Shown one piece after another: positions 10,753 through 56,560 of a stretch of 64,000 nt of DNA. The stretch spans positions 130,585,036 to 130,649,035 of the forward strand of contig NC_085842.1 in assembly GCF_035594765.1 (NCBI RefSeq), written 5' to 3'. The position numbers were made by a program, and so were the translations under genes. Source of the stretch: Anolis carolinensis. Lineage: Eukaryota. The notes under the pieces are model-generated. The model did no database searches and had not been told where the DNA came from. It saw only the letters and a list, made by a program, of their open reading frames with translations. Every line of letters starts with the position of its first letter. The stretch's first letter is position 1.

Positions 10753-10900
10753 CATCCAGGGGAACTCCATTGTACTGTTTCATAGCCTTCAGAGCATCTG
10801 CCTTCCTCTCAAAATGAACATCTGCAGTACCCAGACTACGCCCAGATCGGTCATAGTGCACTGCTGCCTTCTTCAATGTACCAAACTCTGCAAAAAGTTC
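10753..10900 (-). CDS. ALYREF: ALYREF exon 3
   Basis: [49 protein letters not shown], the RRM core; AG/GT bounded; 148 nt. Confidence 0.97.
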
Positions 10901-11046
10901 CTGAAAATGATATGGTAAAAGTAGGAGGTTATCTCAACTTGGAGGATTTGGTAAAGTATTCAGGTCTTTCTAGAAGGATTACCCATTAAAGTGGTAAACC
11001 CTTTCACTCTCACATTTGCCATTTTAATACAGCTACAAATCAGATA

Positions 11047-11309
11047 CAGTAGAGTCTCACTTATCCAACGTTCTGGATTATCCAACGCATTTTTGTAGTC
11101 GATGTTTTCAATGTATTTTGATATTTTGGTGCTAATTTCGTAAATACAGTAATTACTACATAGCATTAATGTGTAATGAACTACTTTTTCTGTCAAAATC
11201 AATCTATTTTGATGTTTAATAGGCTTTTTCTTAATCTCTCATTATCCAACATATTCGCTTATCCAAAGTTCTGCTGGCCCATTTATGTTGGATAAGTGAG
11301 ACTCTACTG
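11047..11309. mobile_element. Tc1/mariner-superfamily MITE
   Basis: 23-bp TIR CAGTAGAGTCTCACTTATCCAAC, flanked by TA on both sides. Confidence 0.88.
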
Positions 11310-11676
11310 TATCACATTAACTTTGCCTCATTTTCTACTTAAATTAACCCCAGAACTTAAGGAAAAATGCAAGAAATGTAGGGCAGATCTCCTGTGGATA
11401 CAATGTTGCTGAGGCCCAGGCCTCCACCAAGGTGCCCTAGCCCCAAAATAAAGTGAAGTGGTTGCATCTCCCATATCCCCTACTACAAATAAGATAAGAA
11501 TGATTCTAGAAAACACGATCCCTGATATACTACCCCACTCAAGCCACAAACTCCTAAATAAGTTAGTGATCTTGCACTATATAAACTGTTGCCCTGTTTG
11601 AATCTCGAGTCATGCAAGTGACTTTCATCTTATGCTGCTTTAAGAGTTGGCCCTCATGAATCTAGTGTGTGAGCAT

Positions 11677-12734
11677 CAGGGCCGGCCGGAGATATTTTTT
11701 AATGGGAAGCGGGGGTGCTGAAAAGCGCCCCCGCCACCCGCGCCCTGGCCCCGCCCAGCGTGCCCTGGCCCCGCCTCCCACGCTGCGTGGGAGGCGGGGC
11801 CAGGGCGATTAGTGAGGGGGGCGGGGCCACAGTTGGCCCCGCCCCCGCCCAGCGTGGCCATTTTGCCCTTAGTAACAAACTAAGGGCAAAAATGGCTTAT
11901 CTGGCTGTGCGCATGCGCACAGCCAGATAAGCCATTTTTGCCCTTAGTTTGTTACTAAGGGCAAAATGGCCTAGGTGTGCTGTGCGCACGCGCACAGCAC
12001 ACCTAGGCCATTCGGGCCTGACTTCCTGGTCGCGGCCGGCGACCGCCCGGGCGATCGCCGGCCGCGACCAGGAAGTCAGGCCCGAATGGGCTATCTGCGC
12101 TGTGCGCACGGGCACAGCGCAGATAGCCCATTCGGGCCTGACTTCCTGGTCGCGGCCGGCGATCGCCCGGGCGGTCGCCGGCCGCGACCAGGAAGTCAGG
12201 CCCGAATGGCCTAGGTGTGCTGTGCGCGTGCGCACAGCACACCTAGGCCATTTTGCCCTTAGTAACAAACTAAGGGCAAAAATGGCTTCTCTGGCTGTGC
12301 GCATGCGCACAGCCAGAGAAGCCATTTTTGCCCTTAGTTTGTTACTAAGGGCAAAATGGCCTAGGTGTGCTGTGCGCACGCGCACAGCACACCTAGGCCA
12401 TTCGGGCCTGACTTCCTGGTCGCGGCCGGCGACCGCCCGGGCGATCGCCGGCCGCGACCAGGAACTTCCTGTCGCGACCAGGAACTTCTCTGGCATGCGC
12501 ACAGCCAGAGAAGCCATTTTTGCCCTTAGTTTGTTACTAAGGGCAAAATGGCCTAGCTGTGCTGTGCGCACGCGCACAGCACAGCTAGGCCATTCGGGCC
12601 TGACTTCCTGGTCGCGGCCGGCGACCGCCCGGGCGATCGCCGGCCGCGACCAGGAAGTCAGGCCCGAATGGCGCCCCTAGCAGCCAGCGCCCGAGGCGGC
12701 CGCGTCCGCGGCCGCCTAGTAACAACCGGCCCTG
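11677..12734. mobile_element. Non-autonomous hAT-type element with nested palindromic interior (ALYREF intron 2)
   Basis: TIRs CAGGGCCGG...CCGGCCCTG; perfect 8-bp TSD GTGAGCAT at 11669-11676 and 12735-12742. Confidence 0.9.
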
Positions 12735-13606
12735 GTGAGCATACGGTTCTCTTAAGTAATAAAAGCCACTGTAGCCTACATCCAAACCACAATATATTCT
12801 AGTTTATCACCTAATACAACATTGGTTTTCTTTCAAAGGATAAACAGTACTGGAAAATGTGGCTCAACAAGATAAAATCTCTCTGCAAAAGAGCACTTTT
12901 TGTCTCCATATGGGTTAGCTTTAGTTTCAGACTTCCCTGCACAGAAAAAAATCCAACAGACATCCACATCTCCCAAGGATTACAAAAAGAACAATGTTGA
13001 GCAGATATATCTACTATAGTACTAAGTTTATGAAACTGCCTGTTTTGGAAATGTTCATATATGCAGTCTACACAAAACAAGACAGCCTATGAATATCAAT
13101 GAGTTTGCTAGCAATCCCAAACTATCAAAGGGGGCAACTAATAATGCTGATAATTTCATAGCTAAGCATTTCTGCTTTTCTCCAAACCCACCTCCACAAA
13201 TGAAATTTGTAACAAGAGATTATCAGGTGCCCAAAATAAAGGCACCTCCTGTCTTTGGAATGCCCTCCTGAGGGAAATCAGGCTAGCCCTCCCTCTACAA
13301 GCCTTTTGCACACAATTGAAGACGGTTTTTCAACAAGTCTTTGACCACATTTAGATTTTTTAAATGAATATACGTGAGGACCCATTGATTCACTAAGCAC
13401 TTTACCTGATAGAGATAGATTATTGTTGTTCTATACCCGCAGCTATTGCTGTTTTGGCTTTTACTGTTTTATGTTGTTTCTGCTATCTTTGTATTTTGTG
13501 CGTTTGCACCTTTGAGCGCTTTGCAAGCTGCCCAGAGTCCCTCTGGGAGATGGTGGCAGGGTATAAATAAAGTTGTTGTTGTTATTATTATTAAACAACC
13601 TTATCA

Positions 13607-13837
<231 letters not shown>

Positions 13838-52975: not shown

Positions 52976-53109
52976 NNNNNNNNNNNNNNNNNNNNNNNNN
53001 NNNNNNNNNNNNNNNNNNNNNNNNNNNNNNNNNNNNNNNNNNNNNNNNNNNNNNNNNNNNNNNNNNNNNNNNNNNNNNNNNNNNNNNNNNNNNNNNNNNN
53101 NNNNNNNNN
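52976..53109. other. Assembly gap (134 N)
   Basis: Run of N. Confidence 1.
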
Positions 53110-56230: not shown

Positions 56231-56560
56231 CAGAGGCGGTTCAACCACCAGGCCAACTAGGCAGTTGCCTGTGGCACCATCTTGTTGGGGGCGCCATCGA
56301 GGCAACTCCTGTCTCCTGTGGCCTGCCTCCGCAAGGTATTGAACTGCTTTTGCTGTTGATTTGTTGTAAAACATGTTTTAGTGCTTAATTTATAAAATCT
56401 TAATGTAATTTGATGTTTAATAGGCTTTTCCTTAATCCCTCCTTAATTATCAAACATTTTCGCTTATCCAAGGCTTTTATTTTTCAGTGATTGGGTTTTT
56501 TTTGGGGGGGGGGCAAAATTCTGTTTGCCTACACTTGAAAAATACCTAGGGCCGGCTCTG
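56231..56560. mobile_element. Non-autonomous hAT element containing a mariner-MITE fragment
   Basis: TIR CAGAGGCGG / CCGGCTCTG; perfect 8-bp TSD GCTGTGGG at 56223-56230 and 56561-56568. Confidence 0.85.

What the first reader, a model, noticed from the sequence alone, without database searches (positions are those of the whole stretch)
11677..12734. Self-similar nested palindrome carried by a hAT element in ALYREF intron 2
Seen: five hairpin modules (A gccattttgcccttag-taacaaa-ctaagggcaaaaatggc; B centred on GCATGC; C ctaggtgtgctgtgcg..cgcacagcacacctag; D about 80 bp centred on CCCGGG; E gctatctgcgctgtgc..gcacagcgcagatagc) in the order A-B-A'-C-D-E-D'-C'-A-B-A'-C-D(trunc)-B(trunc)-A'-C-D. A-B-A' is itself a palindrome. 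11856-12361 is a 506-bp near-perfect palindrome overlapping a second one at 12143-12464, and there is a 390-bp direct periodicity. Asymmetric loops occur in flip and flop orientations. The whole sits between 9-bp TIRs and an 8-bp TSD. Inference: repeated hairpin-primed fold-back synthesis (the logic of rolling-hairpin replication) built this cargo. It would form cruciform DNA and about 250 bp of dsRNA in the pre-mRNA of an essential mRNA-export gene.
Basis: partly seen in the sequence, partly recalled or inferred. Interest (0 to 1): 0.85.

Follow-up and report, generated by a model that had tools for sequence, protein, structure and literature searches.

The report
Hairpin-array hAT transposon in ALYREF intron
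A 1,058-bp non-coding cut-and-paste (hAT) transposon made almost entirely of stacked DNA hairpins sits in intron 2 of a lizard ALYREF gene; the structure is real and striking, but the insertion is a young variant missing from four other individuals, and it belongs to an abundant repeat family.

Summary
Window 11677-12734 is a 1,058-bp element with a 9-bp TIR (CAGGGCCGG) and an 8-bp TSD (GTGAGCAT). It lies in ALYREF intron 2; the gene is on the minus strand. Its interior holds perfect palindromes of 116, 360 and 322 bp and a 390-bp period.

The "self-similar" look has a simpler description. Two hairpin classes alternate strictly. They form a 390-bp higher-order unit (A B A' C D E D' C') with two dyad centres, B and E. 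This unit is repeated about 1.6 times, followed by a rearranged junction and a 180-bp re-copy at offset 192.

Contigs from four other runs of the same species join the flanks exactly, with one TSD copy. The insertion is therefore segregating and recent. All modules are high-copy in those genomes.

Other repeats in the window match TcMar-N7/N8_AC and hAT-N8_AC, which points to the green anole. The closest published TIR group is the orphan hAT-N6/7/8_AC.

Hairpin variants differ only by strict Watson-Crick changes on both arms (6 pairs two-sided, 0 one-sided). This argues for templated arm-to-arm copying, that is, template switching or fold-back synthesis. That step is inferred. No evidence supports a parvovirus-like rolling-hairpin replicon.

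The hairpin cores coincide with NRF1, YY1, ETS and Sp1 promoter motifs. This is an untested lead.

The parts
11669..11676 (.). Left copy of the 8-bp target-site duplication, GTGAGCAT
   Evidence: The empty-site contig has 8 letters that fit either side of the joint.
11677..11685 (+). Left terminal inverted repeat, CAGGGCCGG
11677..11856 (.). Left arm (L). It is GC-rich, with GC boxes, TIR-like GGCCAGGGC/GCCCTGGCC repeats and two small hairpins (11762-11806 with a 22-nt stem; 11817-11846 with a 13-nt stem).
   Evidence: This is the most highly repeated part in other genomes (bins 11669-11802).
11857..12246 (.). First 390-bp higher-order unit: A+ 11857-11896, B1 11897-11930, A- 11931-11970, C+ 11971-12006, D+ 12007-12089, E 12090-12127, D- 12128-12210, C- 12211-12246. 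Dyad centres lie at B (11913/11914) and E (12108/12109).
   Evidence: and 62 (TRF periods 75 and 120).
12247..12464 (.). Second, incomplete unit: A+ 12247-12286, B2 12287-12320, A- 12321-12360, C+ 12361-12396, D+ truncated 12397-12464. It is 216/218 identical to the first unit; the only difference is the mirrored B1/B2 pair.
12143..12464 (.). Perfect 322-bp palindrome without spacer, centred on B2. Its right edge coincides with the truncation of D.
   Evidence: (I3).
11929..12288 (.). Perfect 177-nt arms around a 6-nt loop, centred on E. This is the core of the roughly 520-bp near-perfect palindrome 11847-12370.
   Evidence: (I1).
12465..12512 (.). Rearranged junction. The 21-nt filler 12465-12485 consists of fragments of the D arm in both orientations; 12473-12488 is a direct re-copy of 12453-12468. 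It is followed by B2 with a 7-nt deletion (12486-12512).
12513..12671 (.). Third block: A- 12513-12552, C3 12553-12588, D+ 12589-12671. With the B2 remnant it repeats 12301-12464 at offset 192 (162/164 identical; the only difference is the mirrored C/C3 pair).
   Evidence: (I2).
12672..12734 (.). Right arm (R), with a small hairpin (11-nt stems 12694-12704 / 12707-12717) and the right TIR at 12726-12734.
12735..12742 (.). Right copy of the TSD, GTGAGCAT
10901..13663 (-). ALYREF intron 2, the host of the insertion. It is 2,763 nt with the element and 1,697 nt without it.

Best explanation
This is one recently inserted, still segregating copy of an abundant non-autonomous hAT transposon of a green-anole-type genome. 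It has no coding capacity.

Between a 180-bp left arm and a 63-bp right arm lies an array of two alternating hairpin classes. Class 1 is A/D, with a stem base GCCATTyyGsCCT. Class 2 is B/C/E, with a core GCTGTGCGCAyGCGCACAGC.

The array is organised as a 390-bp unit, A B A' C D E D' C', with two dyad axes. Tandem repetition of that unit automatically produces the overlapping long palindromes.

The inferred mechanism is polymerase template switching at the hairpins: fold-back (inverted) copying and slippage, as in quasipalindrome correction and small inverted triplications. This would occur during replication or during repair synthesis after excision. I place it mostly in the family's history, before this copy inserted.

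Shown here: the anatomy, the mobility, the high copy number of all modules, and the strictly two-sided changes between hairpin variants.

Inferred: the switching mechanism, its timing, and any effect on ALYREF.
For: - TSD, TIR and anatomy.
- Empty site: a 933-bp contig in X1, X2 and X12, and a 342-bp contig in X6, join 11668 to 12735 with 8 ambiguous letters. The X2 contig has 0 differences over 466 nt of right flank.
- Copy number: module depths are 10^2 to 10^3 times the flank depth in all four runs, including module E.
- Variation: joints that skip C, E or other modules appear in other copies (table 5).
- Class-2 hairpins: 24 stem pairs, 99.3% of cells paired, 6 pairs changed on both sides, 0 changed on one side only, no G-T intermediates, 0 of 500 shuffles as high.
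- Within this copy, the only differences among repeated blocks are two mirrored pairs, B1/B2 and C/C3.
- Only about 118 of the 815 array bases are not copies or inverted copies of earlier bases.
- The junction at 12453-12492 shows a 16-nt re-copy and D-arm fragments in both orientations.
- Species and family context: a TcMar-N7/N8_AC-type TIR at 11047, and a 329-bp element at 56232-56560 with hAT-N8_AC length and TIR (PMC3014272).
- Published TIR of the orphan hAT-N6/7/8_AC families is CAGAGSCGGYCC. Very low divergence is reported for N6, and some hAT families are called certainly active.
- 25,165 polymorphic hAT insertions are reported in green anole (PMC7561263).
- Template switching that homogenises and expands inverted-repeat arms, and small inverted triplications of about 150-bp segments, are documented (abstracts, PMC13334657).
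Against: - No full-length second copy could be read, so the family consensus, the progenitor form and the order of events are unknown.
- The TIR matches the published hAT-N6/7/8_AC TIR at only 10/12 (left) and 9/12 (right). The length of 1,058 bp fits none of the three.
- Similarity to the hAT-N8-like copy in the window is confined to 26 terminal nucleotides (81%, E 2.4).
- Two-sided changes could also be kept by selection on a symmetric protein site or on a DNA/RNA stem.
- The covariation count rests on 6 distinct sequences from a single element.
- The internal order of this copy has no independent read support.
Confidence: 0.72

Rival explanations
1. First reader's model. The cargo was built by repeated self-primed hairpin extension of a single-stranded or broken end (rolling-hairpin logic). 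Each round doubles what lies behind a terminal hairpin: first A-B-A', then ...C D-E-D' C'..., and so on.
For: - Each large palindrome is centred on a small hairpin (B or E) that could act as a snap-back primer.
- Inverted copies start 0-6 nt after the fold point.
- Arm-to-arm copying explains the two-sided variants.
Against: - The centres B and E are homologous members of the same hairpin class as C. They obey the strict class-1/class-2 alternation, which fits a tandem array better than arbitrary turn-around points.
- A 390-bp direct period and a 192-bp direct re-copy need forward switches as well.
- There is no terminal hairpin, no nickase or Rep gene and no ORF with a family match.
- The ends are a TIR plus TSD, as in cut-and-paste transposition.
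Confidence: 0.12
2. The hairpins are kept because they function as a mobile array of promoter-type transcription-factor sites, a CpG-island mimic. Class-2 cores would be NRF1 palindromes, A bases YY1-like, D arms ETS-like, and the L arm Sp1 GC boxes. Symmetry would be partly selected, for example to keep copies unmethylated and accessible to transposase. This reading is compatible with the best explanation.
For: - All 6 GCGCAYGCGC sites in the 64-kb window lie in the element, against 0 expected.
- The B core contains TGCGCATGCGCA, 12 of the 13 bases of the FMR1 NRF1 site quoted in PMC3820735. NRF1 binds GCGCATGCGC as a homodimer (PMC10810270).
- 5 GGCCATTTT sites, 8 of the window's 12 CAGGAAGT sites, and 2 of its 4 GGGGCGGGG sites lie in the element.
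- CpG observed/expected is 0.91, against 0.1-0.2 in the surrounding sequence.
- Sp1, ETS, NRF1 and YY1 are four of the nine 'cardinal' promoter motifs.
Against: - The YY1 and ETS assignments rest on remembered consensus strings. No binding, methylation or accessibility data exist here.
- Stems are perfect for 21-23 bp, well beyond any factor's footprint.
- High CpG may simply reflect youth.
- The motif counts are not independent, because the modules are copies of one another.
Confidence: 0.2
3. The internal arrangement is an assembly or sequencing artefact, or arose at this locus after insertion through palindrome instability.
For: - No independent read set spans this copy, because all four runs laid show the empty allele.
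- Bins 12339-12472 have no or little depth in three runs.
- The junction at 12465-12492 looks like a repair scar.
Against: - The perfect TSD and TIR show a real insertion.
- All modules, and most junction words, exist at high depth in other individuals: 0.80 of sampled words are held by X1 although it lacks this insertion.
- The zero-depth bins are explained by multi-mapping contigs being placed once.
- A 1-kb element is far shorter than the long reads of modern assemblies (inference).
- The insertion is very young, with flanks identical to an empty allele, which leaves little time for local events.
Confidence: 0.08

Closest known systems
Orphan non-autonomous hAT families hAT-N6_AC / hAT-N7_AC / hAT-N8_AC of Anolis carolinensis (Novick et al. 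2010, PMC3014272)
   Same: - 8-bp TSD and a closely similar terminus: CAGGGCCGGCCG against the published CAGAGSCGGYCC.
- High copy number and very young age.
- No known autonomous partner.
- A 329-bp hAT-N8-type copy lies in the same window (56232-56560). Its right end resembles this element's left end over 26 nt.
   Different: - The TIR differs at 2-3 of 12 positions.
- The length of 1,058 bp compares with 810, 288 and 329 bp.
- The paper does not mention palindromes or hairpins.
Template-switch products at inverted repeats: quasipalindrome correction, and small inverted triplications (DUP/INV/DUP of about 150 bp; PMC13334657; abstract of PMC13100816)
   Same: - Segments of 120-230 bp are present three times with the middle one inverted (C D, then D' C', then C D).
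- Turn-arounds lie at short hairpins.
- Arms are made identical by copying.
- There is a messy junction with short re-copies.
   Different: - Here the product is carried inside a mobile element and amplified to hundreds or thousands of copies.
- The units are themselves hairpins in strict two-class alternation.
- No mutant background or direct observation of the events is available.
Foldback-type transposons and hairpin-forming MITEs (Drosophila FB, Galileo)
   Same: Non-coding mobile DNA dominated by inverted and tandem repeats, able to snap back into long hairpins.
   Different: - In FB and Galileo, the long inverted repeats are the termini themselves.
- Here the terminal inverted repeat is only 9 bp, and the L and R arms are unrelated.
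- The dyad centres (12108/9 and 12303/4) are not at the element's midpoint (12205/6).
Parvovirus rolling-hairpin replication
   Same: Asymmetric hairpin loops are seen in two orientations. Self-complementary sequences could in principle prime synthesis.
   Different: - No terminal hairpins, no linear ssDNA genome and no Rep/NS1 gene.
- Both orientations occur within one molecule as mirror copies, not as alternative states of one terminus.

Membership tests
hAT superfamily, non-autonomous element | 8-bp target-site duplication, usually nTnnnnAn | tested here: met
   GTGAGCAT lies on both sides, with T at position 2 and A at position 7. The empty allele keeps one copy. The consensus pattern is from general knowledge.
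hAT superfamily, non-autonomous element | Short terminal inverted repeats beginning (C/T)AG | tested here: met
   9-bp perfect TIR CAGGGCCGG.
hAT superfamily, non-autonomous element | Mobility by cut-and-paste: presence/absence alleles with exact boundaries | tested here: met
   Contigs in four runs from four studies join 11668 to 12735.
hAT superfamily, non-autonomous element | A hAT transposase source with matching ends | not testable with these tools
   No genome-wide search of this species was available. Novick et al. also found no partner for the CAGAGSCGGYCC group.
hAT-N6/N7/N8_AC group | 12-bp TIR CAGAGSCGGYCC | tested here: inconclusive
   The left end matches 10/12 and the right end 9/12.
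hAT-N6/N7/N8_AC group | Consensus length of 810, 288 or 329 bp, and internal sequence | tested here: not met
   The length is 1,058 bp. Apart from 26 terminal nt there is no similarity to the 329-bp copy in the window.
Rolling-hairpin replicon | Terminal hairpins on a linear genome plus a Rep/NS1-type nickase | tested here: not met
   The hairpins are internal and the ends are a TIR plus TSD. The stop-free frames of 226 and 243 aa have no Pfam match.
Foldback (FB-like) transposon | Long terminal inverted repeats that make up most of the element | tested here: not met
   The TIR is 9 bp, the L and R arms are not complementary, and the dyads are off-centre.
Inverted triplication by template switching | Three copies with the middle one inverted, and junctions at short inverted repeats | tested here: met
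   The order is C D (11971-12089), D' C' (12128-12246), C D (12361-12464), with B and E hairpins at the turns. This shows the pattern, not the process.
Known RNA families (Rfam) | Score at or above a family's gathering threshold | tested here: not met
   Only sub-threshold generic miRNA-hairpin matches were found.

The most novel reading that the evidence does not exclude
The family is a currently active 'mobile CpG-island mimic'. It would be a hAT passenger built from palindromic NRF1, YY1, ETS and Sp1 site hairpins. A templated arm-to-arm copying process would keep the stems perfect and let the array grow in 390-bp steps. Individual insertions, such as this one 1.45 kb downstream of the ALYREF start codon, would add long perfect palindromes, unmethylated CpG-rich DNA and about 250 bp of intronic dsRNA to housekeeping genes in carriers.
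Probability: 0.15. Interest if true: 0.7.

Novelty: new member of a known kind. Interest (0 to 1): 0.4.

Why it matters
If the reading holds, this family is a natural experiment on three questions.

- How hairpins are created and kept perfect by template switching. The family would provide hundreds of copies in which two-sided and one-sided changes can be counted.
- How long a spacer-less perfect palindrome (322 bp here) a vertebrate germline tolerates.
- Whether an active DNA transposon with an unknown transposase source carries promoter-type sites.

For ALYREF itself the consequence is limited. The insertion is a segregating allele, so any dsRNA, cruciform or splicing effect concerns carriers only. 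Carriers and non-carriers could be compared directly.

Tried and rejected
- Rfam scan at a permissive threshold gave only sub-threshold matches of perfect hairpins to many unrelated miRNA models. These were rejected as generic.
- Exact-pattern scans for module A (metagenome contigs) and the module B core (viral contigs) found nothing.
- The D 23-mer hit 11 metagenome contigs and 2 bacterial MAGs. None extends beyond the 23 bases or is palindromic, so these are chance matches in GC-rich DNA.
- blastn of the element against the rest of the window found no other copy, only the 26-nt terminal match to the hAT-N8-like copy.
- Pfam on the two long stop-free frames found nothing.
- Full-text search for four module strings found no paper. 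Novick et al. hold no supplement as text.
- The search of earlier findings by sequence and by relatives was blank.
- A heterozygous state of the laid individuals was considered, but contig data cannot settle it.
- The RNA status of run X12 is a guess, so no statement on expression, editing or intron retention was possible.
- An alternative parse treats the third block as a 198-bp deletion from a three-unit array rather than a 192-bp duplication. The two cannot be told apart with one copy.

Full report
**What is there**

The stretch 11677-12734 is bounded by a perfect 9-bp terminal inverted repeat (CAGGGCCGG). It is flanked by an 8-bp direct duplication, GTGAGCAT.

The interior was checked in several ways.
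- The repeat finder reports inverted arms of 259 nt at 98% (11847-12105 / 12112-12370).
- It also reports arms of 161 nt at 100% with no spacer (12143-12303 / 12304-12464), and a direct repeat with 390-nt spacing.
- Exact extension gives perfect palindromes at 11856-11971, 11929-12288 (177-nt arms, 6-nt loop) and 12143-12464.
- Module probes occur 5 and 8 times in the window, all inside the element, against 0 in shuffles.
- The 826-nt array folds at -853.5 kcal/mol as RNA on the gene's sense strand (z = -79) and at -550.6 kcal/mol as DNA (z = -57). It contains a roughly 250-bp near-perfect helix.

**Host gene**

ALYREF-type exons lie on the minus strand. Exon 2 ends at 13664 and is followed by GTAGGT. 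Exon 3 begins at 10900 after a CAG acceptor. Intron 2 is therefore 10901-13663. The element lies 929 nt from the donor and 776 nt from the acceptor.

**A simpler description of the 'self-similar' pattern**

- Modules B, C and E are homologous. They are one hairpin class with the core GCTGTGCGCAyGCGCACAGC.
- Modules A and D share the stem base GCCATTyyGsCCT and form a second class.
- The two classes alternate without exception, giving TRF periods of 75 and 120 nt.
- The unit A B A' C D E D' C' (390 bp, 11857-12246) has two dyad axes, at B and at E.
- Repeating such a unit in tandem necessarily creates overlapping long palindromes, each centred on a B or an E.
- The second unit (12247-12464) is 216/218 identical to the first.
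- It stops inside D. A junction follows at 12465-12512. It contains D-arm fragments in both orientations, a 16-nt direct re-copy of 12453-12468, and a B hairpin lacking 7 nt.
- Then comes a block that repeats 12301-12464 at offset 192, with 162/164 identity.
- A copy/inverted-copy factorisation needs only about 118 new bases for the 815-bp array.

**It is mobile, young and abundant**

Contigs of four runs from four studies of the same organism were laid on 11200-13200.
- All four contain a contig that joins 11668 directly to 12735, with 8 letters fitting either side. This is the empty site with one TSD copy.
- The contig is 933 bp long in three of the runs.
- In X2 its 466-nt right flank is identical to the window.
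- A clean single TSD indicates the pre-insertion allele rather than an excision footprint (inference).
- In the same runs, all modules, including E, have summed depths 10^2 to 10^3 times that of the unique flanks.
- Many contigs join modules in other ways, for example skipping C or E. The modules therefore belong to a high-copy family with variable arrangement.
- The particular order in this copy has no independent read support, because these animals lack the insertion.

**Whose genome, and which family**

- The same intron holds a 263-bp MITE (11047-11309). Its TIR, CAGTAGAGTCTCACTTATCC, is the published TIR of TcMar-N7/N8_AC.
- The window also holds a 329-bp element (56232-56560, TSD GCTGTGGG). 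Its ends, CAGAGGCGGTTC and CAGAGCCGGCCC, fit the length and TIR of hAT-N8_AC.
- Both come from the Anolis carolinensis catalogue of Novick et al. (PMC3014272). The window is therefore from the green anole or a close relative.
- The nearest published TIR to this element is that of the 'orphan' hAT-N6/7/8_AC group, CAGAGSCGGYCC. That group has no known transposase source, and N6 shows 0.6% divergence.
- The match is 10/12 and 9/12. The length fits none of the three families. Similarity to the hAT-N8-like copy is limited to 26 terminal nt.
- I therefore file it as a hAT non-autonomous element related to that group, not as a member of a named family.
- Polymorphic hAT insertions are common in this species: 25,165 are reported in PMC7561263.

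**How the array was probably made**

- Across the seven class-2 hairpins (six distinct), 24 stem pairs are 99.3% paired.
- Six pairs differ between variants, and all six changed on both sides. None changed on one side only, and there are no G-T states. No shuffle out of 500 reached these values.
- Within the element, the only differences among repeated blocks are two mirrored pairs, B1/B2 at 11899/11928 and C/C3.
- A and D differ at five stem positions, all compensated (read from the sequence).
- Strict Watson-Crick symmetry points to DNA-level copying of one arm from the other, rather than selection on an RNA stem.
- The known processes that do this are polymerase template switches at (quasi)palindromes. 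These homogenise and extend arms, and produce small inverted triplications of about 150-bp segments (abstracts).
- The order C D, D' C', C D, with hairpins B and E at the turns, has the inverted-triplication pattern. The junction at 12453-12492 looks like a multi-switch scar.
- This part is inference.
- It does not support a rolling-hairpin replicon. The hairpins are internal, the ends are cut-and-paste ends, and the two long stop-free frames have no family match.

**A lead that was not part of the finding**

The hairpin cores coincide with common promoter motifs.
- All six GCGCAYGCGC sites in the 64-kb window lie in class-2 hairpins, against 0 expected.
- This is the palindromic site bound by the NRF1 homodimer (PMC10810270). 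The B core contains TGCGCATGCGCA, 12 of the 13 bases of the FMR1 NRF1 site quoted in PMC3820735.
- GGCCATTTT (YY1-like, 5 sites), CAGGAAGT (ETS-like, 8 of the window's 12 sites) and GC boxes in the L arm are also concentrated in the element.
- CpG observed/expected is 0.91, against 0.1-0.2 nearby.
- The YY1 and ETS assignments are from memory, and nothing was tested functionally.

**Verdict**

The 'nested palindrome' is a hairpin array with a 390-bp two-dyad unit, carried by an abundant young family. The copy in ALYREF is a segregating insertion.

The mechanism (template switching at hairpins) is plausible and partly evidenced. Rolling-hairpin replication is not supported.

Novelty is modest. 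This is a new, or at least undescribed in searchable text, member of a known kind. Its unusually clean architecture is worth a family-wide census.

The N run at 52976-53109 was left untouched.

Noticed in passing
window 11047-11309: A 263-bp MITE lies in the same ALYREF intron. Its TIR, CAGTAGAGTCTCACTTATCC, is the published TIR of TcMar-N7/N8_AC of Anolis carolinensis. Its k-mers reach depths of millions in the laid runs.
   Followed up: partly
window 56232-56560: A 329-bp hAT element with TSD GCTGTGGG and ends CAGAGGCGGTTC / CAGAGCCGGCCC, matching hAT-N8_AC in length and TIR. Its interior (positions 163-240) is 85% identical over 78 nt to the interior of the TcMar-N7-like MITE at 11047-11309, so the two superfamilies share a module.
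   Followed up: partly
window 11742-11808: The left arm carries three copies of a motif resembling the element's own terminus (GCCCTGGCC twice, GGCCAGGGC once). They may be subterminal transposase-binding repeats.
   Followed up: no
window 12717-12727 versus 11868-11880: The right subterminal sequence CCTAGTAACAACC resembles half of hairpin A (CCTTAGTAACAAAC). Hairpin A may derive from the subterminal region, or the match may be chance (rough estimate p about 0.1).
   Followed up: no
window 11495-11496 and 12775-12813: The empty-site contigs carry a 3-nt insertion after 11495 (CAG or AAG). In three runs they also carry four linked SNPs at 12775-12813. X2's empty allele matches the window's right flank exactly, so the insertion arose on that haplotype.
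   Followed up: partly
window 11873 and 12263: About a quarter of genomic copies of hairpin A have an extra C in the loop (table 4). This marks a subfamily.
   Followed up: no
   Followed up: no
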